Position numbers and translations under genes: made by a program
The notes under the pieces: model-generated
Database searches by the model: none
What the model was told of the DNA's origin: nothing
Seen by the model: only the letters and a program-made list of their open reading frames with translations
Part shown: piece after piece, positions 2 to 50,698 of the stretch
Position numbering within the stretch: the stretch's first letter is position 1
How the letters are laid out: every line of letters starts with the position of its first letter
Virus record (IMG/VR): IMGVR_UViG_3300027996_002186
Location: 1 to 64,000 of that record
Strand: one strand, 5' to 3'
Length of the DNA: 64,000 bases

Positions 2-700
2 TATCCTGAATTTAGGTACACTGCAAAAGCTAACACAGTAGTATATAATTATGCTGACGGTGGAATGCCTGGCCCATTAGGTTGGAGAAATAACCTCAGA
101 CCTAATATGAGGCTTGGGTTTGGTGGCGGTGGTGGTTCACTACCAATTGAATTATTATCCTTTGGTGTTGAGTCTAACGATGCAAATGATGTGGTGGTTG
201 AATGGACTACAGCATCACAGAGCAACAATGACTACTTTACAGTTCAACGAAGTGTTGATGGATATGAGTGGGAGGAAGTAACTAAAATCACTGGTTGTGG
301 TAACTGTAATAGTCAGATAGATTACACATATTTAGACAGGAATCCATATACTGGCGTTTCATATTATAGATTGATGCAAACAGATTATGATGGAGTATTT
401 GAAATATTTGCACCACAGTCCGTTACTATCGCAAACAATCAAACAATAGGATTACATATTATACCTAATCCTGCAATAGATAACATCCAATTAGAGTTAG
501 TATATCCAGATCCATTACATCGAGACTATAATCATGATGTACGAATATACAATTCTGATGGAGTAGAAGTTTATAAGAAGTTTTATATGGGTGAGTTAGA
601 GGATTTTAACATTGATATTAAGAAACTTAAAACTGGATATTATATCATAAACACTAAAGGCGATCGAGTTAAAGGTACTGGAAAGTTTATAAAAGAATAG
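2..700 (+). CDS. T9SS (Por) type A sorting domain protein, 5'-truncated by window edge
   Basis: Frame open from nt 2. LPIELLSF...W.TASQ.NNDYF.VQRS.DG..W...YYRL.QTDYDG Ig-like module, then PNPA...IYN..G...L.TGYYII...KFIKE C-terminal domain typical of Bacteroidota T9SS cargo. Confidence 0.85.
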   Translation, partial: YPEFRYTAKANTVVYNYADGGMPGPLGWRNNLRPNMRLGFGGGGGSLPIELLSFGVESNDANDVVVEWTTASQSNNDYFTVQRSVDGYEWEEVTKITGCGNCNSQIDYTYLDRNPYTGVSYYRLMQTDYDGVFEIFAPQSVTIANNQTIGLHIIPNPAIDNIQLELVYPDPLHRDYNHDVRIYNSDGVEVYKKFYMGELEDFNIDIKKLKTGYYIINTKGDRVKGTGKFIKE

Positions 701-9984: not shown

Positions 9985-10821
9985 TTATGATAGTTGGTAT
10001 TCGGAAAACTTCAATATCTTACTTTCATTGAAGTAATTATCCACTGGGTTTATTTCTTTGCTATATGATACCTCAGTTTCGATTTCTTCATCAGGAAATA
10101 GTTTAGGAAACTTTATATTCTTTATCTTATCTATAACTCTCTTAACCGCTAATATACCAATATCATTAAATGATTTCAACCCTTTGATTATATCAACCAT
10201 GAAATGTTTTATAGCAAAAACACCAACACCAATACCAGTTACTATTAATTTACCGACACCATCAGTAGATATCGCAGTTAAAATTGATGATATTGAAGTA
10301 TCACTTTGTTGACCAATATCATTAAATATCAACGCAAATGGTACAAATAAGGCTGTATAAGCAAACATTTCACCAAAAGATGTTACTATTTTACCCAATT
10401 TAGATGATATAAAGTTAAAAACGTTCTTAATACCTTTCATTGATGTTATAAGTGGTTTTATTAAATGAAATATATTTTCATTCTTTAATTTGGTAATTAA
10501 GTCTTTATATTTCTCTTTAGGTTCACTTAATAAAATACCCATTAAACAAACAGTTAAATAAACAATACTTGATTTGGAAATCTCTTGTGGTAATTCCATT
10601 TCTGTTACAAGCTTCTCTATTATAGGATATAATCCCTTAACAGCTGGAGCGAAAACAAACACAAATGAATATTCATAACCTAATTGATTCATAAGTTTTT
10701 TAACACTACCATCCGGTTCTTCCTTATTATGATGATGAACAGCTGCTTGTCCCGGTGTCTTATTTTCCAATAAAAAATTACATTCTCTTTCTGTGATATA
10801 ATCACTATACTTATTAATCAT
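9985..10821 (-). CDS. N-terminal-motif membrane protein
   Basis: MINKYSDYITE...LLEN; several hydrophobic helices; on - strand (ORF track says +). Confidence 0.75.
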   Translation of the reverse strand: MINKYSDYITERECNFLLENKTPGQAAVHHHNKEEPDGSVKKLMNQLGYEYSFVFVFAPAVKGLYPIIEKLVTEMELPQEISKSSIVYLTVCLMGILLSEPKEKYKDLITKLKNENIFHLIKPLITSMKGIKNVFNFISSKLGKIVTSFGEMFAYTALFVPFALIFNDIGQQSDTSISSILTAISTDGVGKLIVTGIGVGVFAIKHFMVDIIKGLKSFNDIGILAVKRVIDKIKNIKFPKLFPDEEIETEVSYSKEINPVDNYFNESKILKFSEYQLS

Positions 10822-27948: not shown

Positions 27949-29415
27949 ATGAAATCTTACACAGAGTTTCTTTTAGAAAAAAAGGAAAATGATTTATTGG
28001 AATTACTCAATGAGGCTGTATTTATTATGGCACCGGAAATGAGTGATATAATAGATGAGTTATATAATAGTGAAGAGGGTTATTCTAAAATAGCTAAATG
28101 TTTCTATATGTTAGATATGGAAGACATAGACACTCAGATAAGTTATCTAAACTTAGGAGATGATAATTCAACTATAACATTCCTAAAACCAGAAAAAGTT
28201 GATAAGATAAGAAAGGAAAAAGAATGGACAATAAATGATGTGTGGGTAAATGTCAAAGGTAATGGTATTAGAGTTGGGAGGTTAACTAGAAAGGTTATCG
28301 AACTTTATAATAAATCAAGAAGTGTAAAAACCACTAAAGCGACTAATTCTTCCATAAGTGATGTTAAATTTACAGATCAAGAAATCGAGAAGTTTGTAAA
28401 TGCTTACAAATCTCAATATGATTTTAATAATAATATAATGGATAATTTTAGTTTAGTATCAAGTGAAGATGATATTAAAGAAGCTTATTTAGAAGATAAT
28501 TATTATAGTGGTGATGGTACACTTGGTGGTTCTTGTATGAGAAACGATGATGCTCAAAATTACCTTGAATTATATCATAATACATCAGTAAATCTATTGG
28601 TATTGAAATCAGCAAATAATAAAATTATGGGAAGATCTGTTATATGGACCCTAAGTGATGGTAGGAAATTTATGGATAGAACTTACACGAATAGAGATTC
28701 TGATGTTGATTTGTTTATAAAATATGCTCAAGAGAATAGATATATTTATAAAGCGGAACAAGACTCACGAGCCCACACTTATTTTTATGAACCTGGTGAT
28801 AATTATAACAACAGCTCATTTATACAATTGGAATCAAAAGTTTATGAATTTAGTATTGGTAATAATGGGGGCGAGGAATTTCCTTATATGGACACAATGA
28901 AATATCTTTACTGGGAAGAAGGTATTATACGCAATTATAAAGATAAATCAAATTATTATATCAAATTGGAAGATGTTGATGGTTGGTGTGATTGTGCTGA
29001 ATGTGATGGCGAAGGTAGAGAAGAATGTAATAAGTGTGATGGTGATGGTAACAATACATGTGAAGATTGTCGTGGGTATGGGTATGAGGAATGTAGTAGA
29101 TGTAATGGATATGGTGATAATATGTGTAAAGAATGTGATGGTGATGAGGAAGTTGAGTGTGAAGAATGTGATGGTGAAGGTTATATAGATGGGGAAACGT
29201 GTGGTACTTGTGGTGGATCCAGTAAGGTTACTTGTGTTACTTGTGATGGATATGGTACAGAAAATTGTTCAAATTGTGATGGTGATGGTAGAGAAGAATG
29301 TGGTGAGTGTAATAACAACGGAACAATTGAATGTGAGACTTGTGATGGTGATGGTGAAGGTGAATGTAGTAGATGTGGGGGATATTCTCATAGAGATTTT
29401 TTTGTTAGTAATTGA
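27949..29415 (+). CDS. N-terminal-motif protein with 12 DnaJ-type CxxCxGxG repeats
   Basis: MKSYTEFLLE; LGGSCM..GRSVIW..FMDRTYT core; paralog of 38632..40113. Confidence 0.85.
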   Translation: MKSYTEFLLEKKENDLLELLNEAVFIMAPEMSDIIDELYNSEEGYSKIAKCFYMLDMEDIDTQISYLNLGDDNSTITFLKPEKVDKIRKEKEWTINDVWVNVKGNGIRVGRLTRKVIELYNKSRSVKTTKATNSSISDVKFTDQEIEKFVNAYKSQYDFNNNIMDNFSLVSSEDDIKEAYLEDNYYSGDGTLGGSCMRNDDAQNYLELYHNTSVNLLVLKSANNKIMGRSVIWTLSDGRKFMDRTYTNRDSDVDLFIKYAQENRYIYKAEQDSRAHTYFYEPGDNYNNSSFIQLESKVYEFSIGNNGGEEFPYMDTMKYLYWEEGIIRNYKDKSNYYIKLEDVDGWCDCAECDGEGREECNKCDGDGNNTCEDCRGYGYEECSRCNGYGDNMCKECDGDEEVECEECDGEGYIDGETCGTCGGSSKVTCVTCDGYGTENCSNCDGDGREECGECNNNGTIECETCDGDGEGECSRCGGYSHRDFFVSN

Positions 29416-29533
29416 TCAAGAAGAATTTGATTATTTATCAAACACATACACAATTCTATATTAGAGGATCATAAATTCAACATATTAGTTGATAAGACAG
29501 AAAACGGAACAAAAAATAAAAATTAAAAGATGA
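29411..29533 (+). pseudogene. possible relic of a histidine kinase C-terminus
   Basis: Fragments IDQEEFDYLSNTYT / ILEDHKFNILVDKTENGTK / IKIKR* joined across two frame shifts; the last stop overlaps the response-regulator ATG. Confidence 0.45.
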
Positions 29534-29964
29534 TAGATTCAATTTTATTAGTGGATGATGAAGACTTATTTCACTTGGTTTTCGAAGATGCGTGTAGCTT
29601 ATTAGATATAACGTTATCATTAGAAAGTTTAACATCTGCTGATGAAGCAGAAAATCTATTCAAAGAATATTTTCAAAATAAAAATATCGATAAACCAGAA
29701 TGTGTATTCGTAGATTTGAATATAATCGGATCATCATTCGATGGTATAGAATTAATTAGAAAGATTAATTTCGAATATGGTAATGGTGTTGTTCTTGGTA
29801 TAATTTCATCATCAGGTGAAGTAGAAGAGCAATCAAAGGCTATAGGGGCTGGTGCTCAATTCTGGATAATTAAATCAGATGATATAGAACCTAGATTGGA
29901 AGAGTTTAGAAAGGACTACAAAGGTTATAAGAACCGAACAAACCCATTTAAAATATATAAATAA
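29530..29964 (+). CDS. stand-alone response regulator receiver domain
   Basis: ILLVDDE, FVDLN (phospho-Asp), DGIELI, ISSS, WIIK. Confidence 0.9.
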   Translation: MIDSILLVDDEDLFHLVFEDACSLLDITLSLESLTSADEAENLFKEYFQNKNIDKPECVFVDLNIIGSSFDGIELIRKINFEYGNGVVLGIISSSGEVEEQSKAIGAGAQFWIIKSDDIEPRLEEFRKDYKGYKNRTNPFKIYK

Positions 29965-29966
29965 TA

Positions 29967-30647
29967 ATGAAAATTAAAGTTGATAAAGGAACTAGGAAAC
30001 AATTACTTGATATCTATAAATCAAAAAGGATTTATTTAGAGGGTAATATTTTGAAGTTAATTGATTGTGATGGTGATGAAGAATTTCAACTTTATGTGGA
30101 GGCCGCTATCAATAAAGATAAGGAGGTAAGAAGGAAAAGATTAGATATAACCAAAAGAGTACAGTCACAGAATACTGAACTAGTAAATGGTCAGAATGAA
30201 AATGATAGAGTAAATAAACAACTAATAAAAGCTTTAGATGAAGCTGAAAAATCTAAATCTCGAGCAGTTAGTGCGAAGGATGAAGCAGAGAAATCTAAAG
30301 ATGAGGCTAATGAATTGAGATTAGAAGCAGAGGAAGCGAGGGTAGAATCTGAAAAAGCTAGAATGGAATCTGATAACGCTAAAAATTCTGCTGAAAATGA
30401 TTTAGAATTAATACAAAAGAAAAGTCAATTTGAATTAATAGGCACGATTGTTAAAGTTTCACTTTGGGTTATTTTGGGAGTTGGTGTATCAACAACTTTA
30501 ATATACACAACAGCTTTATTCTTAGGTGTGGATACAACCGGATTATTTACAACTTGGAGCAATATAATTGGTATTTTATTAACAAATTCATTTAGTATAA
30601 TTGGTACGATAATGGGTGTTAAATATGCACTTGGTAATAAGGAATAA
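29967..30647 (+). CDS. coiled-coil protein with two C-terminal TM helices
   Basis: AE(K/E)(S/A)K repeats, two hydrophobic helices; co-transcribed with RR. Confidence 0.8.
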   Translation: MKIKVDKGTRKQLLDIYKSKRIYLEGNILKLIDCDGDEEFQLYVEAAINKDKEVRRKRLDITKRVQSQNTELVNGQNENDRVNKQLIKALDEAEKSKSRAVSAKDEAEKSKDEANELRLEAEEARVESEKARMESDNAKNSAENDLELIQKKSQFELIGTIVKVSLWVILGVGVSTTLIYTTALFLGVDTTGLFTTWSNIIGILLTNSFSIIGTIMGVKYALGNKE

Positions 30648-30656
30648 AATATAGTT

Positions 30657-30935
30657 TTAGATATTTAATCTTTTGTATTTTTTTGATTCTACCCAACGAA
30701 CTATAAATCTACCAGATCCACTATATCTTGAGTTAGTATCACATATAAGTTTATTTGTTTTTTTATTGAATTTAAAATCCACCTTTCTAAGTTCATCACA
30801 TACGACTTGTGATACTTTTAGTACATATATTTTCTTACCGACTCCAAAATCGTAACAAAAGAGACCGTTCAGTCCTCTCATCTCAATGAAACTAGATTTT
30901 GAGTTATTCTTAACTGCACTAGAAAGTAAATTCAT
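30657..30935 (-). CDS. hypothetical protein
   Basis: ORF, ATGA-coupled. Confidence 0.6.
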   Translation of the reverse strand: MNLLSSAVKNNSKSSFIEMRGLNGLFCYDFGVGKKIYVLKVSQVVCDELRKVDFKFNKKTNKLICDTNSRYSGSGRFIVRWVESKKYKRLNI

Positions 30936-31159
30936 ATTTTATGTAATAATTTATGTAATATTCTAAGTTGTGATAAATCTGAATTTGCATCCTCAACACT
31001 CTTATAAAGAAATAATATTTTTTCAGTATTACTCTTTTTATATTCTAGTCTAAATTCATCATCTATTAGAATTACTTTCATGTCATTTAATGAATTCTGA
31101 TCTCTTAGAATTTCATAGAAGTCTGTCTGGAAGGCGTAATTTTTTAGTTTTTGTAACAT
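30932..31159 (-). CDS. hypothetical protein
   Basis: ORF. Confidence 0.65.
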   Translation of the reverse strand: MLQKLKNYAFQTDFYEILRDQNSLNDMKVILIDDEFRLEYKKSNTEKILFLYKSVEDANSDLSQLRILHKLLHKI

Positions 31160-31298
31160 AATTATTTTTTATAAAGATAGGTATGTTATTATTACTAAAG
31201 AAATTTAAAAAGTTTTAATTATTTATACACATATAAAAAATTATACTAATCTATATAATTCATAATATTTGTATATATTTGATATAAATACAATTCAA

Positions 31299-31496
31299 AT
31301 GAATAAATTTAAGAAAGGACAAAGAGTATTTTACCTTTTGATGGGTAGTACTTGTCAATCGAATATTGTGGATTTTTATACTAAAGATGGTATAATCTTT
31401 TACGTTGATGATTTATTTGATAATATTAAAGAATTTTATTTATTCACGAATAGAAAGAGTTGTATAGAATTTCACCAAAATAGTTTTAAAAGTTAA
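31299..31496 (+). CDS. hypothetical protein
   Basis: MNKFKKGQRV; TATATTTG upstream. Confidence 0.6.
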   Translation: MNKFKKGQRVFYLLMGSTCQSNIVDFYTKDGIIFYVDDLFDNIKEFYLFTNRKSCIEFHQNSFKS

Positions 31497-31506
31497 TATA
31501 TACAAT

Positions 31507-31707
31507 ATGAAAAATATAAAAACATTTGAAAACTACGAGTACGAAAATTTCACATATAGTGATATGGAATTCGCTAAAGAATTATACGAAGAAGGTATGA
31601 CTGACCCAAAAGACATTGCTAGAGAAATGGATTGGAAAGATGATATGGATGAAGCAACAGTTAAACAGATGATATACACAATGAAAAAAAGTGGAGAGAT
31701 AACATGA
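31507..31707 (+). CDS. N-terminal-motif protein, HTH-like
   Basis: MKNIKTFENYEYE; AKELYEEG..PKDIAREM. Confidence 0.75.
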   Translation: MKNIKTFENYEYENFTYSDMEFAKELYEEGMTDPKDIAREMDWKDDMDEATVKQMIYTMKKSGEIT

Positions 31708-32177
31708 AATATTTAAAGAAATTTGATAAAATAGATGAGTCTATTCATGATGGGATGGTAAATGTTATTAGAAATATTCTAAGAGAAACTTATGACTCTA
31801 ATAATGAGGCTAGTATAACTGATGTTATAAATAAATTTGCTGATAAATTATTCATTGATGTTTCTGATAGAGAAGCTTTCTCAACTAGTATAATCGGTGA
31901 GATTATGGAAGAAAGTTTAAATGAATCTAGGATATATGACTATAAAATACTACCGGATGAAGCCTTAAAGGAATTAGAGATGTATGTTGATTATAATGAT
32001 ACTGATAATAAAATAGAGGTTGTTCCGGATCCAAGAGTTGATGGGTCTTTTGCTGTTAAAGTTTATAGAATAAATGATGACTATACTTTCCATTTATTGT
32101 GGAACAGAGGTGCTTATGATGAGGTTGAGTTTGATACATTCCCACCAATATCAAGTGACTTAAAGTTTTTTACCTGA
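31704..32177 (+). CDS. N-terminal-motif protein
   Basis: MKYLKKFDKIDES; internal SLNES. Confidence 0.8.
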   Translation: MKYLKKFDKIDESIHDGMVNVIRNILRETYDSNNEASITDVINKFADKLFIDVSDREAFSTSIIGEIMEESLNESRIYDYKILPDEALKELEMYVDYNDTDNKIEVVPDPRVDGSFAVKVYRINDDYTFHLLWNRGAYDEVEFDTFPPISSDLKFFT

Positions 32178-32201
32178 TAAAAAATCATAATAATATAACA
32201 A

Positions 32202-32597
32202 ATGAAAACTTTAAATAAATTAAAATTATACGAGGAGTTTGTGGAAGAACCAACTATTAATCATTCATATATAAAGGCTAAGATGAAAGAATTATCTGAG
32301 TTAGTAAACTATACCTTAAAAAGTGATTTTGATAAAGGCGCTCATTTTGAATATGGTATAACAGAAGATGATGTAGAAATTACATTGGTGTATAGAAATC
32401 ACGAAATAGAGAATTCTATAACATTACAGATACTTTTTAACCTAGACTCATTGATATTAGGATTCTATATGGGAGGTCCTGTTGACTATGAGGGCCACGA
32501 AGAACACTTTAGGGTGTCTTCAATAGAAGAAGGTATGGAATGTATAGAAAAGAAAATTTACGACGCTATAGGTGTCTCTGAGAAGAAAGAAATATGA
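32202..32597 (+). CDS. N-terminal-motif protein
   Basis: MKTLNKLKLYEEFVEE. Confidence 0.8.
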   Translation: MKTLNKLKLYEEFVEEPTINHSYIKAKMKELSELVNYTLKSDFDKGAHFEYGITEDDVEITLVYRNHEIENSITLQILFNLDSLILGFYMGGPVDYEGHEEHFRVSSIEEGMECIEKKIYDAIGVSEKKEI

Positions 32598-33475
32598 AAC
32601 ACTTAACAACACATAACGAAGGTTTATTCAATTGGAGAAGAAATAGGGGTAAGGAACCTTTACATAGAGGATTCTCTAAAGATGATATGTACATATCCAG
32701 TGGTATTGGATATAAGAAAAGGATTGGTACATCACAATTAAAGGATTCTAATACTTTTTACTCTATCCGTTTTCCTGATATGTCTTTAAATATGATAAAA
32801 CAACACATAGTTTCTAAGAGAGATATTCATTCTAAAGGTATATTTGGTGACTTTGGTAGTTATAGAACAGACGGGCCTCGATATAGAGAAAAGAGTTGGG
32901 TTAAGAGCACATCTGTTTGGTATGATTGTGGGAATATATTTAACTCTCTTAGAAATATATCAGATCAATGTGGGTATAGTTTGAATCAGTCTGTTCATGT
33001 TACATCTACACAAAAAGATACTAAGATAGTAGAAATAGTAAACTTTTCTTTTTATAAATTAACTGGTATTTTATCAGATGGTATTGATGAATGTTTAACA
33101 CTTTTATATAAGGTTGAAGAAGATGATAATTATTATCAGATAGGTCAGATAGAAAAAATAGAAGATAGTCCAGAAAGAAATATAGTGGATGAGGTTATAG
33201 AGGAAAATTTCTTGGAACTTATGGATGATGGTTTAATTACCTTTAAATCAGAGGAAATAAAAATAAAGGGTGTTGTTAATTATAAATGTTATGTTAAAGT
33301 ATCAAAAGATATGACACCACAAGTTCTATTTAAGATATCAGAATGTTTATTAGTTGCTGCTCAAAGGTTGAATGATATTAACATTGATATTGATATAAAG
33401 TCTATGCAACATTCAGAAGATAGAAATACAAGAACTGGTACAACTGATATTGAGTTTACTGCTATTCAAAGATAA
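32594..33475 (+). CDS. N-terminal-motif protein, paralog-family domain at C-terminus
   Basis: MKHLTTHNEG; VIEENFLELMDDG. Confidence 0.8.
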   Translation: MKHLTTHNEGLFNWRRNRGKEPLHRGFSKDDMYISSGIGYKKRIGTSQLKDSNTFYSIRFPDMSLNMIKQHIVSKRDIHSKGIFGDFGSYRTDGPRYREKSWVKSTSVWYDCGNIFNSLRNISDQCGYSLNQSVHVTSTQKDTKIVEIVNFSFYKLTGILSDGIDECLTLLYKVEEDDNYYQIGQIEKIEDSPERNIVDEVIEENFLELMDDGLITFKSEEIKIKGVVNYKCYVKVSKDMTPQVLFKISECLLVAAQRLNDINIDIDIKSMQHSEDRNTRTGTTDIEFTAIQR

Positions 33476-34007
33476 ATCCTAAATCTCTTAGTCTATCACC
33501 GTGGTCAAAAGCAAATCCATTTTTATTCATTTGATTTAATTCTTCAATCGAAAACCATCTAGCTGATTGAGCATCATCCATACCGATTATATTGTTACCC
33601 ATATCTCCAGGAATCTCAACAGTAAACGAATGAGCTTCTACCCATGATGTATCACTATTTCTAGGATCTCTATTCTTATCATCAAAAACTCCTAATAGTT
33701 TGAATTTAGAATCTTCTATTTCCGATAGGTCTAATCCCGTCTCTTCTAGAATTTCTCTTTTACCAGCTTGTAACTCAGTCTCTAACCCAGGTTCCCATTC
33801 ATTACCCCGATTAGCAGTAGTATCAACAAAACCACCAGGAATACTCCATTTATTTGGTTCTGCCTTAACAGACTCACCTCTTTGTATTAATAATACTTGT
33901 TGTGTACCATCAACTGTTCTAGTTACGATAGTATCAGCGGTTGGGTTTGGACCAACATATCTTAATGATGGCTTGTCGAATGACTCAAATGTTTTTACAA
34001 ATTTCAT
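33462..34007 (-). CDS. NUDIX hydrolase (ADP-ribose pyrophosphatase/NadM-NrtR-like) with N-terminal motif
   Basis: VLLIQR, WSIPGGFVD, AGKREILEETGL, RDPR, GMDDA..ARW, AFDH; starts MKFVKTFES. Confidence 0.92.
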   Translation of the reverse strand: MKFVKTFESFDKPSLRYVGPNPTADTIVTRTVDGTQQVLLIQRGESVKAEPNKWSIPGGFVDTTANRGNEWEPGLETELQAGKREILEETGLDLSEIEDSKFKLLGVFDDKNRDPRNSDTSWVEAHSFTVEIPGDMGNNIIGMDDAQSARWFSIEELNQMNKNGFAFDHGDRLRDLGFIFE

Positions 34008-34043
34008 AGTGTATATATTATAAAATTTTTATATATTTGTAGG

Positions 34044-34466
34044 ATGAGTAAATTATACGGAGTTGCTTTAATAACCAATTCCAAAATTAGAGATTTGATA
34101 TTGAGTTATGTTTTAGACGAAGAATCATTCAACAAGAATGATTATGTTTATGATGGTGAGTATGATTATATTATTGATATCAATAACACACTCAATACAG
34201 ATATCTCTAGATATACAAAGGTTTATAAAACATTAAATGGGGCTAAAAGACTAAGAGATAGTTTTGGAACAGATTCAGTAATGAGACTAAGGTACGCCAT
34301 ACCAGCAGGTGTTGGTTGGAAACGAGAATATAATACACCGACACATCAAGCTGTTATTATTGATATAACAAAAAAGTGGGATGATATAATCGATAAAAGA
34401 ATTGAAGAACGTACTAAAATCTTTAATAAAGATATAGAGAGGTTAAAATCAAAGAAGTCCAAATAA
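34044..34466 (+). CDS. hypothetical protein
   Basis: TATATTTG (34032-34039) 4 nt upstream of ATG. Confidence 0.75.
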   Translation: MSKLYGVALITNSKIRDLILSYVLDEESFNKNDYVYDGEYDYIIDINNTLNTDISRYTKVYKTLNGAKRLRDSFGTDSVMRLRYAIPAGVGWKREYNTPTHQAVIIDITKKWDDIIDKRIEERTKIFNKDIERLKSKKSK

Positions 34467-34874
34467 CAAGTAAGCAACTTGTATAATCAACCCAATAATC
34501 ATAAAAATAGTTCTATTTCTATAAGTCATTATCTTTGTTAACTTAGCAGTTGAAGTTGTTGATTGTGATTTCCATTTTAATGGATAAACTTTAGAATCTA
34601 TTCTATTTCTAGTAACATAATAACTTCCATTATGGAAGAAACTAAATACTAAAGCCATACCAACAGTATTTAGTATAGAGAACCACCCAATGGTAAATGA
34701 TAACATAACTCCTATTAATATAAGTATTATACCTCTTTGTGATGCGAACACAGGGTGTATTTCAAAGTCATTTTTAGATTTTGAAATTCCCTTGAAATAC
34801 CAATAAAAACCTTCTCTAAATCCCTCTAACATTGAATATAATATCCAAAGTATATTTGTTATTAATACTATCAT
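34449..34874 (-). CDS. multi-TM membrane protein
   Basis: 3-4 hydrophobic helices. Confidence 0.75.
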   Translation of the reverse strand: MIVLITNILWILYSMLEGFREGFYWYFKGISKSKNDFEIHPVFASQRGIILILIGVMLSFTIGWFSILNTVGMALVFSFFHNGSYYVTRNRIDSKVYPLKWKSQSTTSTAKLTKIMTYRNRTIFMIIGLIIQVAYLLFGLL

Positions 34875-34879
34875 AATTA

Positions 34880-35893
34880 TTATTTTTCTACTTTTACTCT
34901 AAAGTACAATTCATAAACATCAAAGACTTTAGTAACATCTCTTGAAAATCTTTTTGGTTCAGTAACAATCTTAAATGTTTTTTGTTCTTCATACCAATAA
35001 AATATTGTTATTAATATATTACCATCATTATCAATAATCTTATATCCCCGCTCGGCACTATGTGATTGTATATGTGGTCTAGATGCTTTAACTGGTACTA
35101 ATTTTAATTCATGGCTTTCGATTTTACTGTAAAACTTAGTAACCCAAGTGTTGAATAAAGACATTAGTTGTTCTCTATTATCAGATTTACCACTATCCAT
35201 AGCAGTTTTTATAGCCCATTCCGATGGTAGTAAATCATTATTTAATATTCTTATTTCATTTGGTAAAGTTCTAAGTTGTGCTTTATATTCATAAGTATCA
35301 CCACTTGGTCTTCTCCAAGTAGAATCGAAACTTAATGAATACCCTTCTATTCGAGCACCATCTAGGTCACGGTACCTAACACCTCTGTGGTGATGGTCAT
35401 CCACTATCTGTAAAGATTTTAATATATCTTCTACACCTTCATAATTAATAAAGGAATCACTTTGCTCTCTATCGAAAATTATTCTTATTGTAATATGATT
35501 TATATTTCTAATTGAATAATACACACTGGCTTTACCATCAAGCATTGATTTTATCCTATGTATTGAGTTATAGATAGAGTCTATTATATTTAACTCTGAT
35601 TCGAAATAAACACTCCCATTCCAATTCCTAACATCACCAGATCCACCATCAGATATAGATTTATCATTAATCGTTCTATCAAGTTCTATTTCGATACCTG
35701 GATAATAATCTTTAACATCTCTAGTTCTTCTGTGTGGGTAACCTGTTGATAGTGATATGTAAACAGGATCTATCATATAAGTATATCCCAAATCAACCAT
35801 ATCGATAAATATTTCCTCGATATTATCATCATCAGCATTTATTCTTGATAACAAGTCTTCTTTACTTTCTAATATTTGGGAAAATTTTCTCAC
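34880..35893 (-). CDS. N-terminal-motif protein, paralog family
   Basis: GTG start MRKFSQILES; IEEIFIDMVDLGY. Confidence 0.8.
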   Translation of the reverse strand: MRKFSQILESKEDLLSRINADDDNIEEIFIDMVDLGYTYMIDPVYISLSTGYPHRRTRDVKDYYPGIEIELDRTINDKSISDGGSGDVRNWNGSVYFESELNIIDSIYNSIHRIKSMLDGKASVYYSIRNINHITIRIIFDREQSDSFINYEGVEDILKSLQIVDDHHHRGVRYRDLDGARIEGYSLSFDSTWRRPSGDTYEYKAQLRTLPNEIRILNNDLLPSEWAIKTAMDSGKSDNREQLMSLFNTWVTKFYSKIESHELKLVPVKASRPHIQSHSAERGYKIIDNDGNILITIFYWYEEQKTFKIVTEPKRFSRDVTKVFDVYELYFRVKVEK

Positions 35894-35927
35894 ATAGATA
35901 TATATTAAAATAAATCTATTTAAATTG

Positions 35928-35956
35928 AAAAACCCACCGTTACAGCGGTGGGTTTT
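35928..35956. terminator. intrinsic terminator
   Basis: AAAACCCACCG-TTACAG-CGGTGGGTTTT. Confidence 0.85.
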
Positions 35957-36114
35957 ATTAACTCCTCGTTACAAGTATTAACTATTTTCTTACACCTGAG
36001 AACTTGCTAAACCTGGACTCACGGATTCACTTTTCAAGTAGAAAAGCTAACATCGTGTTAGAGAAGGAAATGAATTAAAGTTGTTTAATTCTGAATGTCT
36101 TTCTTTTTATTTAT
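35928..36114 (-). ncRNA. candidate ~185-nt ncRNA
   Basis: TATATTTG box (36119-36126), ORF-free hairpin series, then terminator. Confidence 0.5.
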
Positions 36115-36204
36115 ATTACAAATATAGTGAAAAGTTTTTAATAAAAAATAAAATTTTACATTTTTAATATATAATACTCATATTAGTTAAAATAAAAACA
36201 ATAA

Positions 36205-36594
36205 ATGGGTCATATAGAGAAATTTAAGAGTTTTAGTAGAAGAAAAGTGGATAAAATAAGGAATCTTACTTGGGATGATGTTAAATCATTCGGTAATAAG
36301 AGTTGGGTTTACCTTAAACGTGAGAGTGATGAGACAAAACAAGCCGCTATGATTCTAAACAAAATGATATCTGGTAAAGATGTTACTAACAACGAAAAGA
36401 AATTCTTAAAAGAACAGAGCAAAGACCTTGTTAGGATAATATCAACCGGTGCTTTACCTATACCAATCACAGCTATCTTGGTATCTCTTGGTAAGAAATA
36501 TAATTTTGAAGTTTTTCCTGGTGATCAAAAAGAATTAAAAGCTCTTATCGAAAAGGAAAAGGAAGAGTTGGGTGTTGCTATCGAAGAAGAATAA
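36205..36594 (+). CDS. N-terminal-motif protein, weakly LETM1-like
   Basis: MGHIEKFKSF; EKKFLKEQSKDLVRII..LP followed by hydrophobic stretch. Confidence 0.7.
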   Translation: MGHIEKFKSFSRRKVDKIRNLTWDDVKSFGNKSWVYLKRESDETKQAAMILNKMISGKDVTNNEKKFLKEQSKDLVRIISTGALPIPITAILVSLGKKYNFEVFPGDQKELKALIEKEKEELGVAIEEE

Positions 36595-36627
36595 TTAAAC
36601 CACCAATATTATCGGTGGTCTAAACTA

Positions 36628-37386
36628 TTATTTTAAGTGGGGTAATACTTCTTTTGCGTAGTAATCATCAAACCCTTCAAGTAATCCAGTAATTGGAGTA
36701 CTCTTATCAGTTATAATGATTTCATCAATGAAACCAAAGTCTAAAGCTTCTTGTGAGTTTAACCACTTATCTCTTCTAGCACTTTCTAATACTTCATCAA
36801 AAGATTTACCACTATTCTCAGCTAACATCTTAAATAAGATATAATTATACTTCTCAGATTCCATTTGTGAGATGCGATTATCAGCAACATGTCCTTGTGC
36901 ACCACTCGATACTTGGTGAATCATAACCTTTGAGAAATTCAAAGATGAACGTTTGCCTTTTGTACCAGATGATAATAGAATAGAACCCATAGATGCTGCC
37001 ATACCTGTGTTGATAGTTTCAATATCACAATCGATATATCTCATTACATCAACCATAGATAATCCACTTTTAACTGAACCACCTGGTGAATCAATGTGCA
37101 TCCTAATATCTCTTTTCTCCGCTGCTCCTTCTTCTACGGAATCAAGATACATCAATTGTGCTTGTACAACAGTTGACATATTATCATTCACAACACCAGC
37201 AACCCATAAAATTCTTTCTCTCATTAATCTAGAGAAAATATCCATTTGAGTTACTCTCATTTCTCTTTCTTCAAGTATGTATGGTGTCATACTATTCTCC
37301 ATTTGTTTTTGGTAATAGTGTAAGTTCATAGAAGATAACCCCTCACTCTTTGCGTACTTATTAAAATCTTTCCCGTAATCTATCAT
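36628..37386 (-). CDS. clpP: ATP-dependent Clp protease proteolytic subunit
   Basis: MDIFSRLMRERI, IDSPGGSV, GMAASMG (catalytic Ser), VMIHQ, RDKWL. Confidence 0.97.
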   Translation of the reverse strand: MIDYGKDFNKYAKSEGLSSMNLHYYQKQMENSMTPYILEEREMRVTQMDIFSRLMRERILWVAGVVNDNMSTVVQAQLMYLDSVEEGAAEKRDIRMHIDSPGGSVKSGLSMVDVMRYIDCDIETINTGMAASMGSILLSSGTKGKRSSLNFSKVMIHQVSSGAQGHVADNRISQMESEKYNYILFKMLAENSGKSFDEVLESARRDKWLNSQEALDFGFIDEIIITDKSTPITGLLEGFDDYYAKEVLPHLK

Positions 37387-37472
37387 ATTTCTTAATTTAG
37401 TTATTAATCATATAAAGAATAATCAAAAAAGTTTAATTGTTATTTAATTACTTTATCCTTATATTTGTGATT

Positions 37473-37781
37473 GTGAAAAAGAGTTTAATACTTAAAGGTA
37501 AGAGTGAAATCGATAATTTGTTTACAACTGGGTATCCAGTTTCAAGTGATTTTGTATTTGCTAAAGTTTTATCTTCTGATTCAACTAAATTCCTATTCGC
37601 TGTTTCATCTAAGAAATTTAGAAGAGCAGTTGATAGAAATAGAATAAAAAGGTTGATGAGAGAAGTTACTCGTAAAATAGATATAAGTGGTGTTAAAATT
37701 GCTTTTATCTACACCGGAAAATATTTACCGACATACTCAGAAGTAGAATTATCCATCAAATCAATAATCGGTAAAATATGA
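37473..37781 (+). CDS. rnpA: ribonuclease P protein component
   Basis: LK.K.EI..LF..G; FAVSSKKFRRAVDRNRIKRLMRE (RNR motif); GTG start 5 nt after TATATTTG (37460-37467). Confidence 0.9.
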   Translation: MKKSLILKGKSEIDNLFTTGYPVSSDFVFAKVLSSDSTKFLFAVSSKKFRRAVDRNRIKRLMREVTRKIDISGVKIAFIYTGKYLPTYSEVELSIKSIIGKI

Positions 37782-37886
37782 CATATTAAGGAATCTTAAC
37801 AATATAGTAACAATAAGATAGCACCATTTTATACATTTTTTTGACTTTTAGGTATATATAAAATCAAATAAAAATGTATAAAATAA

Positions 37887-38504
37887 ATGAATCTTAAAAT
37901 AAAATTATTATCATTACTAATGTTATTCACATTTAGTGGTATTTCTCAAATAAATTATGAAAATTGGTCAACTCTGAATGTTTGTGGTGGTGTAAGTGAT
38001 AAATTCAAGGTATACATGGAATTAGAACAAAGGTTCAATCATACAAACAAAAAAATAAGATATCTACATGGTGATATTGGATTGGTATATAAAGTAGGTG
38101 ATAAATTATCTATTGGTGGTTATTACAGAGAGTTATATGAAACTAAAAAGGGTGTTCGTGTTTCTGAAATTAGACCACATTTGGATATCTTTTATAAATT
38201 CAATAAGAATTGGAAAGTAAGAATAAGAAATGAATATCAAATAAAAGAATTTGATGATGATATTTATAGACTGAGAATAAGAGGTACTTACAAATTGAAC
38301 AAATTTGAAAATTTCAATCCATTAATACAAACAGAGGTTTTTTTAACACCAAATGGGTTAGTTAGGAATAGATTAAATATAGCGACCTCAATAAAGGTAG
38401 GTGATAAATTAATTATAGAACCTGGTTACTTATTAGAATCTAATAATAAGTCAGGATGGACTAACATACACATTTTGTGGGTTAATACAAAAATTAAATT
38501 TTAA
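37887..38504 (+). CDS. DUF2490-like outer-membrane beta-barrel protein
   Basis: Signal peptide, alternating beta-strand pattern, E.RP and R.R.E motifs, terminal Phe. Confidence 0.75.
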   Translation: MNLKIKLLSLLMLFTFSGISQINYENWSTLNVCGGVSDKFKVYMELEQRFNHTNKKIRYLHGDIGLVYKVGDKLSIGGYYRELYETKKGVRVSEIRPHLDIFYKFNKNWKVRIRNEYQIKEFDDDIYRLRIRGTYKLNKFENFNPLIQTEVFLTPNGLVRNRLNIATSIKVGDKLIIEPGYLLESNNKSGWTNIHILWVNTKIKF

Positions 38505-38631
38505 TAGTTTATTTAAGTAAATTACAATATTCTTTGAAGTGTTTGATTCTATCATATAATTTTATTGAAAAATAAAGCCGCTGATGCTAAAGGATATTTA
38601 TCAACCACTATATTAAAAGGTGTGGTTATGG

Positions 38632-40113
38632 TTATTGACAATCATAACAAGGTCGTTCACCTCTCCCACTACAATCAGAACATTCTATGGTTGAATTACC
38701 ATCACATTCAGTACAATCTACTTTACCCCTAGCATCACAATCCTCACAATCTACATCATGTTCTTCACCATCAGATCCTTCTTCTGTTATAGTTCCTCCA
38801 CCATCACAATTTGAACAATTTTCTGTACCATATCCGTCACATTCTGGACAGTCTCTTTCACCACTACCACCACAATCATAACATTCCACTTCGCCTCCAC
38901 CACCACATCCCTCACATCTATAATGTGAGCCTTCAGTATCTTCTAATATATAACAATTACCACATTCATCTATTGATAGTGTACCATTATCTTTATTCCA
39001 ATATTTCAAAGTGTCTAAGTAAGGATATTTTTCATATTCACCTGGTTTTATATCCACGATTATGTTCAAATTTGTATCATCACCATTAGGATCAATACAA
39101 CTACCATTGGCGTTGGATGCGTTTCCACGTTTTGTATACCAACCATTCTCTTTAGCATAATCCTTAAATAATTGAACATCAGAATCATTGGCTGTGTATA
39201 TTCTATCCATAAATCTTTTACCATCTCTCAATTTCCAAAGTAATGCTCTTCCTAAAATTTTATCTGTATCATCATCTGATTTATAAATAACCAAAGTACA
39301 AACTTCTGGATTAGAAATATAGATATCAAAAAATTCCTCATCAACAGCGGACATACAAGAACTACCTAATACGCCCCTCCTTGTCGAGTAATGTGAATAG
39401 TGATACCAATATCCTATTTTATCACCAGTAACTTCTTCAAATAGTGAAAATTTATCATTAAATTTATCAATTGTTGCTTTATATAAATTAACAAATACTT
39501 CAATATCCTTATCAAGGAATTCTATATCATTAGTTTTAAGTAATGCTCTAATAGCTCTACCTACTTTAACTTCTTGTCTATTCGTTGACCAAATTTTATC
39601 CAATCTATCATCAACCTTTCTAATCTTTTCGGCATTTATGACCAATTCTGTACTTGGGAATTTAACATAAACAAATCTCTTACCCGATTCTTCCGAAACT
39701 GTTTCTTTAATAATTTCTCCTAGTTCATCATTTTCTGGTTTTATCAATTCCTCACCAGGTGTGAATCCTAAAGCATCGAAAATAGTTTTATTTTTATATT
39801 CTCCTCCTTCATTTTTATTAAAAGTTAACCAACCACCATTATTACCAACAAATCTAACCTTAATATTTTCCTCACTCAGTATTTGTTGTGCTCTTCTATC
39901 TGGTATAAATGATACTTTATCATTTTTATCCATTACTATATCAAAATAATTAGACCTAACGTCTAAATCTTTATTCTCAACATCTAAAAGTGATTTGGAT
40001 ACTGGGTTCTCTATTTTTGAAAGAGTGAGTCTAAATTTATCAGAATAAACGACATCCGACTCCAATATTAACTCTAATGACTCATTTATGAAATCAAAAT
40101 ACTTTTTTAACAT
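38632..40113 (-). CDS. N-terminal-motif protein with 8 DnaJ-type CxxCxGxG repeats
   Basis: MLKKYFDFINESLELILES; LGSSCM..GRALLW..FMDRIYT core; paralog of 27949..29415. Confidence 0.85.
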   Translation of the reverse strand: MLKKYFDFINESLELILESDVVYSDKFRLTLSKIENPVSKSLLDVENKDLDVRSNYFDIVMDKNDKVSFIPDRRAQQILSEENIKVRFVGNNGGWLTFNKNEGGEYKNKTIFDALGFTPGEELIKPENDELGEIIKETVSEESGKRFVYVKFPSTELVINAEKIRKVDDRLDKIWSTNRQEVKVGRAIRALLKTNDIEFLDKDIEVFVNLYKATIDKFNDKFSLFEEVTGDKIGYWYHYSHYSTRRGVLGSSCMSAVDEEFFDIYISNPEVCTLVIYKSDDDTDKILGRALLWKLRDGKRFMDRIYTANDSDVQLFKDYAKENGWYTKRGNASNANGSCIDPNGDDTNLNIIVDIKPGEYEKYPYLDTLKYWNKDNGTLSIDECGNCYILEDTEGSHYRCEGCGGGGEVECYDCGGSGERDCPECDGYGTENCSNCDGGGTITEEGSDGEEHDVDCEDCDARGKVDCTECDGNSTIECSDCSGRGERPCYDCQ

Positions 40114-50648: not shown

Positions 50649-50698
50649 ATTATTTTTCATATCAGTATAATAATTTTCTTTATTCTTTATATATTAAA

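What the first reader, a model, noticed from the sequence alone, without database searches (positions are those of the whole stretch)
27949..40113. Two paralogous tagged proteins with extended DnaJ-type zinc-finger rods (12 vs 8 CxxC)
Seen: a shared core (VGR..R...DIE.FVN.YK, G.LG.SCM, GR...W.L.DG..FMDR.YT..DSDV.LF..YA.EN, PY.DT.KY) and acidic CxxCxGxG arrays sharing the identical CDGYGTENCSNCDG. There is no J-domain. Known: DnaJ has four such repeats binding two Zn in a nested hairpin. Inference: 6-Zn and 4-Zn acidic rods of variable length (possible DNA mimics or rulers) on an uncharacterised, possibly catalytic (SCM) domain.
Basis: partly seen in the sequence, partly recalled or inferred. 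Interest (0 to 1): 0.6.

Follow-up and report, generated by a model that had tools for sequence, protein, structure and literature searches.

The report
Phage proteins with zinc-ladder tails
Two related genes of a 483-kb phage belong to a very large, unstudied phage protein family; their tails are unusually long zinc-stapled hairpins, and their first ten residues look like the T4 capsid-loading tag, so they may be carried in the phage head and delivered into the host with the DNA.

Summary
Window 27949-29415 (+, 488 aa) and 38632-40113 (-, 493 aa) are paralogs (34% identity, E 1e-45) with 12 and 8 C-terminal CxxCxGxG units and no J-domain.

They are two of seven paralogs in a 483-kb phage with a T4-type head. 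The family is phage-only, has at least 5,900 clusters and has no Pfam model.

Each protein has four parts:
- a 10-22 aa N-terminal tag resembling the T4 capsid targeting sequence;
- an alpha/beta N-domain with no match;
- a core of about 200 aa whose only structural matches are GNAT folds (Z about 6), without the CoA-binding signature and with an invariant Ser-Cys;
- an acidic tail.

In 211 homologs the zinc array nearly always has an even number of units (4-16), a strict 11-residue period and one longer spacer exactly in the middle. The AlphaFold arms superpose on BSD2. This supports a nested DnaJ-type hairpin stretched into a ladder of 2-8 zincs.

The tag motif also forms 11 tandem repeats in the phage's gp21-family prohead protease/scaffold protein. 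My best reading is head-packaged, protease-processed ejection proteins. The function of the core and the tail remains inferred.

The parts
27949..29415 (+). Gene 1 (P0001, 488 aa): tag, N-domain, GNAT-like core and a 12-unit zinc ladder
   Evidence: ORF and translation. Paralogy to gene 2, E 1e-45. AlphaFold2 full-length model, mean pLDDT 77.
27949..28014 (+). N-terminal tag of gene 1: residues 1-10 with Y4, F7, L8 and E10, and a second (L)xE site ending at the invariant E22
   Evidence: 7 of 10 residues are identical to the first ten residues of T4 IPII/IPIII. Y4, F7 and E10 are nearly invariant and E22 is invariant in 52 homologs. In T4, residues 4 and 7 are needed for targeting and 8 and 10 for cleavage (PMC9026906).
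28015..28374 (+). N-terminal alpha/beta domain of gene 1 (about residues 23-142); no match to any known family or fold
   Evidence: Secondary structure and pLDDT 70-90. No PHROG hit. No structural hit covering this range.
28375..28983 (+). Conserved core of gene 1 (about residues 143-345), GNAT-like fold, invariant S195-C196, R229, D243, Y246, P312-Y313-x-D315
   Evidence: Invariant columns. 49 of the top 50 chains in an exhaustive structural search are GNAT chains, Z up to 6.0, over model residues 161-336.
28993..29376 (+). Zinc ladder of gene 1: 12 CxxCxGxG units (residues 349-476) with an 11-residue period. The longer spacer (residues 408-417, nt 29170-29199) sits between units 6 and 7
   Evidence: Spacings. 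BSD2_CRD 34.7 bits when the tail is scanned alone. BSD2 chain 6ekb aligns 61 of its 62 residues to model 356..473, across both arms.
38632..40113 (-). Gene 2 (P0002, 493 aa): tag, N-domain, GNAT-like core and an 8-unit zinc ladder
   Evidence: ORF and translation. Exact sequence found on 40 contigs, the longest 551 kb.
40060..40113 (-). N-terminal tag of gene 2: residues 1-11 (Y5, F8, I9, E11), and a second (I)LE site ending at E18
   Evidence: Translation. Matches the tag pattern found at 25 ORF starts in this genome.
38917..39636 (-). Conserved core of gene 2 (residues 160-399), GNAT-like fold
   Evidence: AlphaFold2 model from a 46-sequence alignment: pLDDT 90, pTM 0.83. Foldseek returns only GNATs, probability up to 0.99. 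VIA Z 5.9-6.0.
38638..38916 (-). Zinc ladder of gene 2: 8 CxxCxGxG units (residues 400-492), 4 + 4 around a 23-residue central spacing. The protein ends one residue after the last unit
   Evidence: Spacings. BSD2_CRD 23.1 bits and DnaJ_CXXCXGXG 19.1 bits, both below their cut-offs.
29242..29283 (+). 42-nt patch shared with gene 2 (38800-38841, minus strand) that encodes the identical 14 residues
   Evidence: 41 of 42 bases identical with diverged flanks. One 1,875-bp public contig joins gene 1 to the end of gene 2 exactly at this patch.
48648..50660 (-). Another tagged ORF in the window (670 aa; weak DHH phosphoesterase and winged-helix matches); context for the tag
   Evidence: Tag listed. 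Pfam matches below cut-off.
9985..10821 (-). Another tagged ORF in the window (278 aa, no family match); context for the tag

Best explanation
Both genes encode members of a very large, phage-restricted family built from four parts.

1. Tag. A 10-22 residue N-terminal helix imitates one repeat of the phage's own prohead protease/scaffold protein. I infer that it docks the protein into the assembling head core, as the T4 capsid targeting sequence does. The gp21-family protease would then cut it off after (I/L/V)-x-Glu.

2. N-domain. An N-terminal alpha/beta domain of unknown role.

3. Core. A GNAT-like core that has lost the CoA pyrophosphate loop. It keeps an invariant pocket of Ser-Cys, Arg, Asp, Tyr and Pro-Tyr-x-Asp. 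I infer that it acts on a host or DNA-associated target, either as an enzyme using a donor other than acetyl-CoA or as a specific binder.

4. Tail. An acidic C-terminal appendage. In these two copies it is a DnaJ/BSD2-type zinc hairpin extended into a ladder. Two antiparallel arms of n/2 CxxCxGxG knuckles have an 11-residue pitch, and knuckle i pairs with knuckle n+1-i around one zinc. That gives 6 zincs in gene 1 and 4 in gene 2.

The ladder gives a thin, rigid, strongly negative rod whose length is set by the repeat number. I infer that the mature proteins stay in the head and enter the host with the DNA. The rod would then serve as a polyanionic, possibly nucleic-acid-mimicking, contact or spacer element.

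Shown: paralogy, family size, repeat arithmetic, fold matches, tag enrichment, and the tag-like repeats in the protease/scaffold protein. Inferred: zinc occupancy, packaging, cleavage, ejection and target.
For: Paralogy and family:
- The two genes are paralogs, E 1e-45.
- The genome holds 7 paralogs.
- The family has 5,915 clusters at E<=1e-3 and 2,687 at 1e-30.
- There is no Pfam, PHROG or PDB sequence match.
- Structural neighbours in BFVD and the ESM Atlas are all uncharacterised phage proteins.
- A strict DNA pattern for the core motif hits only 3 MAG contigs in 185,579 prokaryote genomes.

Ladder:
- 194 of 211 arrays have an even unit number.
- In 164 of 194 even arrays the unique longest spacer is the central one, against 23 expected by chance.
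- Arm spacings are mirror-symmetric more often than in shuffles: 0.10 against a mean of 0.05, above all 1000 shuffles.
- BSD2 aligns across both arms of the model, 356..473, Z 5.3.
- The length difference between the 12-unit and 10-unit relatives maps to the middle of the array.

Core:
- The model has pLDDT 90.
- Only GNAT chains appear at the top of Foldseek and of an exhaustive VIA search.

Tag:
- P0001 residues 1-10 match T4 IPII/IPIII at 7 of 10 positions, including 4, 7, 8 and 10.
- The tag pattern stands at 25 of 660 ORF starts, against about 2 expected.
- The 7-residue tag core occurs 73 times in all ORFs: 25 times within the first 12 residues, and 11 times in one protein.
- That protein is a head maturation protease, PHROG 207, E 3e-32. 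Its relatives are the gp21 proteins of T4-like phages.
- It lies between a T4-type portal and a T4-type major capsid gene.
- The repeats are kept in two related 636-735 kb phages.
- Other tagged ORFs include an Acb1-like 2H phosphoesterase fused to an exonuclease, and a T4 Rnl1-type RNA ligase. Those enzyme types would fit delivered counter-defence cargo.
Against: - No virion proteomics exist for this uncultured phage, so packaging and cleavage are unobserved.
- The tag helix (residues 4-20) is modelled as part of the N-domain at pLDDT about 70. It could simply be the first helix of the fold.
- Homologs in a roughly 100-kb phage lie among replication genes.
- The homologs in cultured Cellulophaga phage phi38:1 and Thermus phage TSP4 are annotated only as hypothetical proteins and lack an exact tag.
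- GNAT matches stay below Z 8, the level at which the tool warns of common arrangements.
- The GNAT motif A is absent on reading the alignment.
- The centre of the ladder is modelled at pLDDT 33-52.
- I could not read model coordinates, so Cys-Cys pairings were not inspected directly.
Confidence: 0.45

Rival explanations
1. The proteins are ordinary intracellular phage proteins made after infection, for example in replication or host takeover. The N-terminal motif is only the first helix of the family fold, or a favoured start-of-gene composition in a 30% GC genome. It is not a capsid-loading signal.
For: - A homolog in a 103-kb contig lies between DNA polymerase B, a helicase and DnaB.
- The phi38:1 and TSP4 homologs lie in early or middle-looking regions and are not annotated as structural proteins.
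- The tag helix is modelled within the N-domain.
Against: - The motif stands at the start of about 25 otherwise unrelated ORFs. That is 12-20 times more than at internal Met residues or in composition-preserving shuffles.
- The same 7-residue motif is repeated 11 times in the prohead protease/scaffold protein and is rare elsewhere.
- It matches the T4 targeting sequence at the positions shown by experiment to matter.
Confidence: 0.3
2. The zinc tail is a chaperone-type client- or partner-binding module, like the cysteine-rich domains of DnaJ and BSD2. It would work with the phage's own DnaK/DnaJ system rather than as an inert rod or mimic.
For: - The unit is the DnaJ/BSD2 motif.
- The genome encodes DnaK, a full type-I DnaJ and a second J-domain protein.
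- One paralog (362390-363685) lies directly beside the DnaK gene (360479-362260).
Against: - Five of the seven paralogs, and many relatives, replace the zinc array with plain acidic tails. This points to charge rather than a specific zinc-finger surface.
- The arrays are extremely acidic, about -2 per unit. I have not compared this with the charge of the DnaJ cysteine-rich domain.
- No J-domain is fused to any member seen.
Confidence: 0.15
3. The core is a working GNAT acyltransferase that modifies a host protein or small molecule with acetyl- or acyl-CoA.
For: Every top structural match is a GNAT, including the Legionella effector VipF (87 residues aligned at rmsd 2.4 A). The conserved polar residues lie on the strands and loops that form the GNAT active-site cleft, judged by secondary-structure position.
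Against: - No GNAT Pfam model matches any of the 46 members, even at E<=1.
- The beta4-alpha3 loop, which carries Q/R-x-x-G-x-G/A in GNATs (my knowledge of the family), reads T-x-x-D-S-D here, with no glycine.
- Z is only about 6.
Confidence: 0.15
4. The array is not one hairpin. Either neighbouring knuckles pair to give a string of independent small zinc beads, or the cysteines form disulfides.
For: The middle of the array is modelled with low confidence. The mirror symmetry of spacings is only weakly enriched.
Against: - With 10 or 14 units, neighbour pairing would have to bridge the long central spacer.
- Modules of four cannot tile 6, 10 or 14 units.
- The single longer spacer is central in 164 of 194 even arrays.
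- BSD2 superposes on residues drawn from both arms.
Confidence: 0.1

Closest known systems
Cysteine-rich zinc-finger domain of type-I DnaJ (PF00684) and of plant BSD2 (PF25436; PDB 6ekb)
   Same: - The repeat unit is the same, CxxCxGxG.
- The inferred topology is the same: a hairpin in which outer units share one zinc and inner units share another.
- The P0001 tail passes the BSD2_CRD cut-off.
- BSD2 superposes on both arms of the model.
   Different: - DnaJ and BSD2 have four units and two zincs. The phage's own DnaJ has spacings 14/26/14.
- Here there are 8 and 12 units, and 4-16 (rarely about 22) in relatives. The pitch is a strict 11 residues, the charge is about -2 per unit, and the protein ends right after the last unit.
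- No J-domain or DnaJ C-terminal domain is attached.
GNAT (GCN5-related N-acetyltransferase) fold superfamily
   Same: The order of strands and helices in the core matches. 49 of the 50 best chains in an exhaustive search are GNATs.
   Different: - There is no sequence-profile match.
- The CoA pyrophosphate-binding signature is replaced by a conserved acidic D-S-D.
- The invariant Ser-Cys lies in the alpha1-alpha2 loop.
- Z is only about 6.
T4 internal proteins IPI, IPII and IPIII (and Alt), loaded by the capsid targeting sequence and cut by prohead protease gp21
   Same: - The N-terminal decapeptide has an aromatic residue at 4 and 7, I/L at 8 and Glu at 10.
- The genome has a gp21-family protease, a gp20-type portal and a gp23-type capsid protein.
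- Diverse cargo proteins share only the tag.
   Different: - Apart from the tag I saw no resemblance between these proteins and T4 IPI, IPII or IPIII; I did not compare the mature regions directly.
- The proteins are 5-6 times larger than IPI.
- At least 25 tagged ORFs exist here, against a handful in T4.
- The tag equals a repeat of the protease-linked scaffold region. I have not seen this described, and I did not check it in T4.
- Packaging is unproven.
Acidic DNA-mimic anti-restriction proteins (T7 Ocr, ArdA)
   Same: They share only the idea: an elongated, rigid, strongly negative surface. This rests on my knowledge of Ocr and ArdA, not on a test.
   Different: No sequence or fold relation was found. 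The charge spacing was not compared with B-DNA because model coordinates could not be read.
PcfJ domain (PF14284) of conjugative elements
   Same: A language-model feature search listed a PcfJ cluster at score 0.80. To the eye, both families have a Cys-containing loop followed by a helix and strands.
   Different: Profile-profile comparison gave probability below 1% and aligned unrelated segments. The PcfJ profile I could build had low diversity. I treat this as not supported.

Membership tests
DnaJ/BSD2-type cysteine-rich zinc-finger domain | Repeated CxxCxGxG motif | tested here: met
   Over 1,536 units the consensus is C-x-x-C-D-G-x-G, with G6 at 92% and G8 at 90%. There are 12 units in P0001 and 8 in P0002.
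DnaJ/BSD2-type cysteine-rich zinc-finger domain | Score above the curated Pfam cut-off | tested here: inconclusive
   P0001 tail alone: BSD2_CRD 34.7 bits against a cut-off of 27 (passes), DnaJ_CXXCXGXG 17.4 against 32.7. P0002 tail: 23.1 and 19.1, both below cut-off. The phage's own DnaJ scores 45.6 bits as a positive control.
DnaJ/BSD2-type cysteine-rich zinc-finger domain | Nested hairpin: outer units share one zinc, inner units the next | tested here: inconclusive
   Consistent with the data: 194 of 211 arrays have even numbers, the spacer is central in 164 of 194 (23 expected), and BSD2 aligns to model 356..473 across both arms. Cys-Cys distances could not be read, and the centre of the model has low confidence.
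DnaJ/BSD2-type cysteine-rich zinc-finger domain | Zinc actually bound, one per two units | not testable with these tools
   Needs metal analysis of purified protein.
Type-I DnaJ (Hsp40) co-chaperone | J-domain and DnaJ C-terminal domains flanking the zinc domain | tested here: not met
   No PF00226 or PF01556 match in either protein. Both are found in the separate phage DnaJ gene.
GNAT superfamily | GNAT fold (mixed sheet with the beta4/beta5 splay and flanking helices) | tested here: inconclusive
   All top matches are GNATs: Foldseek probability up to 0.99, E 2.5e-3; VIA Z 5.9-6.1 with 87-126 residues aligned. These are below the Z 8 level the tool advises for trust.
GNAT superfamily | Motif A, Q/R-x-x-G-x-G/A, in the beta4-alpha3 loop that binds the CoA pyrophosphate | tested here: not met
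   Reading alignment A1 against the model's secondary structure, the loop consensus is T-x-x-D-S-D with no conserved glycine. The motif definition comes from my knowledge of the family.
GNAT superfamily | Match to a GNAT sequence profile | tested here: not met
   None of the 46 members matches any acetyltransferase Pfam model at E<=1.
T4-type capsid-targeted internal (ejection) proteins | N-terminal targeting decapeptide: aromatic residues at 4 and 7, L/I at 8, Glu at 10 | tested here: met
   P0001 has Y4, F7, L8 and E10, and 7 of 10 residues identical to T4 IPII/IPIII. P0002 has the same pattern shifted by one residue. The requirements are taken from PMC9026906. The positions are conserved in the family.
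T4-type capsid-targeted internal (ejection) proteins | A gp21-family prohead protease and a T4-type head module in the same genome | tested here: met
   PHROG 207 head maturation protease, E 3e-32. tblastn finds gp21 of T4-like phages. Portal PF07230, E 2e-56, and capsid PF07068, E 3e-26, lie adjacent.
T4-type capsid-targeted internal (ejection) proteins | Presence in virions, removal of the propeptide, delivery into the host | not testable with these tools
   The phage is uncultured and no proteomics are available. The one interaction fold I ran gave no verdict.
PcfJ domain (PF14284) | Profile-level sequence similarity | tested here: not met
   hhalign probability 0.2-0.3%, with unrelated segments aligned. 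There is no Pfam hit.

The most novel reading that the evidence does not exclude
Huge T4-type phages load dozens of different cargo proteins into the head with a short tag that copies one repeat of the protease-linked scaffold. One large cargo family carries a zinc ladder of tunable length: a rigid polyanionic rod of 2 to 8 or more zinc rungs. Once ejected with the DNA, the rod acts as a nucleic-acid decoy or molecular ruler against host defence nucleases, while the GNAT-like core modifies or binds the target.
Probability: 0.15. Interest if true: 0.85.

Novelty: new variant of a known kind. Interest (0 to 1): 0.6.

Why it matters
1. The zinc ladder would be a new architectural use of a familiar motif. 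A DnaJ-type two-zinc hairpin is extended, rung by rung, into rods whose length evolves in steps of two units. That is a natural example of a length-programmable metal-stapled scaffold, and it is easy to test by metal analysis and structure determination.

2. The core defines a family of about 6,000 clusters. It is confined to phages and has no name, no Pfam model and no known function, yet it is present in up to 15 places per genome in the largest phages known.

3. The link between the N-terminal tag and the repeats of the prohead protease/scaffold protein gives a concrete, testable rule for predicting which proteins huge uncultured phages carry in their heads. Here that set includes enzymes resembling Acb1 and RNA ligase 1, which would fit a counter-defence role. 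What these phages deliver at infection is currently an open question.

Tried and rejected
- Pfam, PHROGs and PDB sequence searches of the whole proteins, the core and the N-domain gave nothing above noise, apart from the zinc motif.
- A weak profile hit to the T4 MotA C-terminal domain (E about 0.1) was not backed by any fold search and was dropped.
- The PcfJ lead from the feature search failed profile-profile comparison.
- Pfam scans of ten long homologs found no informative fused domain. There was only one sub-threshold phosphoribosyltransferase match.
- Gene neighbourhoods of homologs in five other contexts showed no recurrent partner.
- A fold of the tag with the scaffold repeats returned 'no verdict' and counts neither way.
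- The search for related loci could not use the core alignment. A strict DNA pattern was used instead.
- A co-variation test of tag against scaffold repeat across phages was not decisive. The two relatives examined keep the same motif, and the one with degenerate repeats (LR756500) gave no family hit in the tblastn search with P0002.
- A chimeric protein joining gene 1 to the end of gene 2 is a single 1,875-bp contig. I regard it as a probable assembly artefact across the 42-nt shared patch.
- The reads tools were not used.
- No alternative genetic code was needed.

Full report
**Observation.** The two ORFs are real. Window 27949-29415 (+) encodes 488 aa (P0001) and 38632-40113 (-) encodes 493 aa (P0002). 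P0001 has 12 CxxC units at residues 349-476. P0002 has 8 units at 400-492, plus one stray CxxC at 384. The identical 14-residue string exists at residues 432-445 and 425-438. It is encoded by 41 of 42 identical bases amid diverged flanks. Neither protein has a J-domain.

**Where the window lies.** The window is the first 64 kb of a 483,262-bp virus record estimated 98% complete, with 29.6% GC. Its closest records are the 634-735 kb uncultured 'huge phages' LR745206 and LR756501-4. The genome has a T4-type head module:
- a gp20-type portal (PF07230, E 2e-56);
- a gp23-type major capsid protein (PF07068, E 3e-26);
- between them, a 713-aa protein whose first 230 residues are a head maturation protease (PHROG 207, E 3e-32), with tblastn relatives among the gp21 genes of T4-like phages.

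Genes around the two ORFs are a mix of accessory functions and give no functional clue. They include M50 peptidase, an EEP nuclease, a receiver domain, NUDIX, ClpP, the RNase P protein, DUF2490 and a metallophosphoesterase.

**The family.** A profile of the core finds seven paralogs in this genome. Only the two window copies carry zinc arrays. The other five end in other, mostly acidic, tails. A profile search of 1.84 billion representative proteins finds 5,915 clusters at E<=1e-3 and 2,687 at E<=1e-30. None of the hits with a source name is characterised. One is called 'putative hydrolase' in the 656-kb contig of an uncultured marine phage.

Structural neighbours among predicted viral proteins and ESM Atlas clusters are all uncharacterised phage proteins. 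Core-only relatives occur in cultured Cellulophaga phages (phi38:1 gp037) and in Thermus phage TSP4. Both end in acidic tails. A strict DNA pattern for the most conserved core motif hits only three MAG contigs among 185,579 prokaryote genomes. I therefore treat the family as phage-restricted. The caveat is that the pattern catches only part of the family. I found no paper that describes it.

**The zinc array.** Over 1,536 units from relatives the consensus is C-[SDE]-[ED]-C-D-G-[DS]-G-[ER]-[VI]-[ED]. This is the DnaJ/BSD2 unit, with two conserved glycines and mostly acidic variable positions. Scanned alone, the P0001 tail passes the BSD2_CRD cut-off (34.7 bits against 27). The P0002 tail does not (23.1). 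The phage's own canonical DnaJ scores 45.6 bits on the DnaJ model and has spacings 14/26/14.

The arithmetic of the arrays is the strongest evidence for their architecture:
- Of 211 arrays, 194 have an even number of units (4, 6, 8, 10, 12, 14 or 16; the mode is 10).
- The pitch is almost always exactly 11 residues.
- In 164 of the 194 even arrays the single longest spacer is the central one, where 23 would be expected by chance.
- The protein ends 0-1 residue after the last unit in 150 of the 211 arrays.
- Some arrays have palindromic spacings such as 11-13-11 | 11-13-11. Equality of mirror spacings is twice the shuffled mean and above all 1000 shuffles, though it is a weak effect.

Pairing of neighbouring units would have to cross the long spacer whenever n/2 is odd. 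Four-unit modules cannot tile 6, 10 or 14 units. A parallel arrangement is excluded because the spacer is short. Pairing of unit i with unit n+1-i in one antiparallel hairpin is the simple arrangement that fits. This is the DnaJ topology extended.

The full-length AlphaFold2 model (mean pLDDT 77) is confident for the outer rungs (about 77) and poor in the middle (33-52). BSD2 (6ekb) aligns 61 of its 62 residues to model residues 356..473, that is to both arms at once (Z 5.3, rmsd 4.8 A). I could not read coordinates, so individual zinc sites were not inspected.

Compared with 10-unit close relatives, the two extra units of P0001 map to the middle of the array, and the outer units align. This suggests growth at the hairpin tip. 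The tails carry net side-chain charges of -30 and -21. The mean over 205 tails is -22, about -2 per unit, before counting the zinc-thiolate sites.

**The core.** A model built from 46 diverse sequences has pLDDT 90 and pTM 0.83. Foldseek against the PDB returns only GNAT acetyltransferases (best E 2.5e-3, probabilities up to 0.99). An exhaustive alignment to 48,161 representative chains gives GNATs at Z 5.9-6.0. With the full-length model, 49 of the top 50 chains are GNATs and the remaining one is BSD2. The list is strikingly uniform, but Z is below the level at which the tool advises trust.

At the sequence level no acetyltransferase profile matches any member. The loop after strand beta4 binds the CoA pyrophosphate through Q/R-x-x-G-x-G/A in GNATs (my knowledge of the family). 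Here it is a conserved T-x-x-D-S-D. The invariant residues are a Ser-Cys pair in the alpha1-alpha2 loop, Arg on beta3, Asp and Tyr on beta4, and Pro-Tyr-x-Asp later. By their secondary-structure position they sit where GNATs build their substrate cleft. I read this as a GNAT-derived domain that keeps a functional pocket but probably not acetyl-CoA chemistry. The N-domain (about residues 23-142) has no match anywhere.

**The tag.** P0001 begins with a decapeptide that shares 7 of 10 residues with the first ten residues of T4 IPII and IPIII, which I read from the T4 record. According to a review of the T4 work, these ten residues are the capsid targeting sequence. Residues 4 and 7 are needed for targeting and residues 8 and 10 for processing. 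The protease gp21 cuts after L/I-x-Glu (PMC9026906; see also PMC3012670, and PMC5694885). P0001 has Y4, F7, L8 and E10. P0002 has the same pattern shifted by one residue. In 52 homologs Y4, F7 and E10 are nearly invariant, and a second Glu (E22, after L-x) is invariant.

A pattern for the tag stands at the first Met of 25 of the 660 ORFs of at least 70 aa in this genome. About 2 are expected from internal Met residues and 1.3 (maximum 4) from shuffled N-termini. The 7-residue core of the tag occurs 73 times in all ORFs. Twenty-five of these fall within the first 12 residues (3.7 expected). Eleven fall in a single protein, the prohead protease, whose middle part consists of 14-residue repeats that each contain the tag core and end in (I/L)-A-Glu. 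The same repeats are present in the proteases of LR756504 and LR756501. The capsid protein's N-terminal region carries a related string.

Other tagged ORFs include a 2H phosphoesterase (Acb1-like) fused to an exonuclease, a T4 Rnl1-type RNA ligase, and a weak DHH/winged-helix protein. I infer that the tag mimics one scaffold repeat, docks cargo into the head core, and is cut by the protease. This follows T4, where diverse internal proteins share only the targeting sequence and include the injected anti-restriction protein IPI*. Nothing here shows packaging directly.

**Most likely mechanism, and rivals.** My best reading (confidence 0.45) is that these are head-packaged, protease-processed ejection proteins with a GNAT-derived effector core. 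Their polyanionic C-terminal appendage is, in these two copies, a zinc ladder with 6 and 4 rungs. The recurrence of acidic tails in the non-zinc paralogs and in distant homologs suggests that negative charge is the common requirement, and that the ladder is a rigid, length-adjustable way to present it. A DNA-mimic or ruler role remains speculation.

The rivals are:
- an ordinary intracellular role, with the 'tag' being only the first helix of the fold (0.3);
- a chaperone-type zinc domain working with the phage's DnaK/DnaJ, one paralog being adjacent to dnaK (0.15);
- a true acyl-CoA transferase (0.15);
- a non-hairpin arrangement of the array (0.1).

**Comparison and novelty.** The tail works like, and is probably homologous to, the DnaJ/BSD2 cysteine-rich domain. 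It is not a DnaJ protein, and it exceeds the defining four-unit, two-zinc format by up to fourfold. The core resembles GNATs in fold only. The tag resembles the T4 targeting sequence in the residues that matter. I therefore rate the finding as a new variant of known kinds, attached to a large family that has no description.

**Limits.** There are no coordinates for the models, no proteomics and no expression data. The structural Z-scores are modest. The tag-scaffold interaction fold gave no verdict. Reads tools were not used.

Noticed in passing
Whole genome; in the window at 9985-10821 (-), 27949-29415 (+), 38632-40113 (-) and 48648-50660 (-): About 25 ORFs of the 483-kb genome start with the same short motif: an aromatic residue, two residues, an aromatic residue, I/L/V, one residue, Glu. 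Chance predicts about 2. The tagged ORFs include an Acb1-like 2H phosphoesterase fused to an exonuclease (genome 344043-345353) and a T4 Rnl1-type RNA ligase (358129-359394).
   Followed up: partly
Outside the window: genome 135766-137907 (+) = L004:7766-9907: The gp21-family prohead protease is fused to 11 tandem 14-residue repeats. Each repeat contains the tag motif and ends in (I/L)-A-Glu. The repeats are kept in two related 636-735 kb phages. The gene sits between a T4-type portal and a T4-type capsid gene.
   Followed up: partly
29242-29283 (+) and 38800-38841 (-): A 42-nt patch, identical at 41 of 42 bases, is shared by the two paralogs in inverted orientation about 9.5 kb apart. One 1,875-bp public contig encodes a chimera that switches from gene 1 to gene 2 exactly there. 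This is probably an assembly artefact, but recombination or inversion is not excluded.
   Followed up: partly
Outside the window: genome 360479-362260 (+), 352898-353989 (-), about 238563 (+): The phage encodes a full DnaK (E 2e-246), a complete type-I DnaJ (J-domain, four-unit zinc domain, C-terminal domain) and a second J-domain protein. A family paralog (362390-363685) lies next to dnaK.
   Followed up: partly
24986-25372 (+): A 128-aa ORF with ten CxxC pairs at 7-residue spacing, a different cysteine-rich type. It matches DUF326 just above its cut-off.
   Followed up: partly
25566-26180 (-), 27155-27886 (-), 29530-29964 (+), 33462-34007 (-), 36628-37386 (-), 37437-37781 (+), 37887-38504 (+), 42277-43089 (-): Cell-like accessory genes surround the two paralogs: M50 peptidase, an EEP-family nuclease/phosphatase, a stand-alone response-regulator receiver, NUDIX, ClpP, the RNase P protein subunit, DUF2490 (porin-like) and a metallophosphoesterase.
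   Followed up: no
Outside the window: L004:5280-7244 (-) and L004:11798-12187 (+): An RNase II/R-type protein (RNB domain, E 1e-110, with cold-shock and S1 domains) lies between the portal and protease genes. An NFACT-R RNA-binding domain protein follows the capsid gene.
   Followed up: no
Related proteins P0185, P0191, P0194, P0195, P0328: A subgroup of homologs (600-670 aa) carries about 19-22 CxxC units with irregular spacings in the second half. These may be two ladders in tandem or a different arrangement.
   Followed up: no
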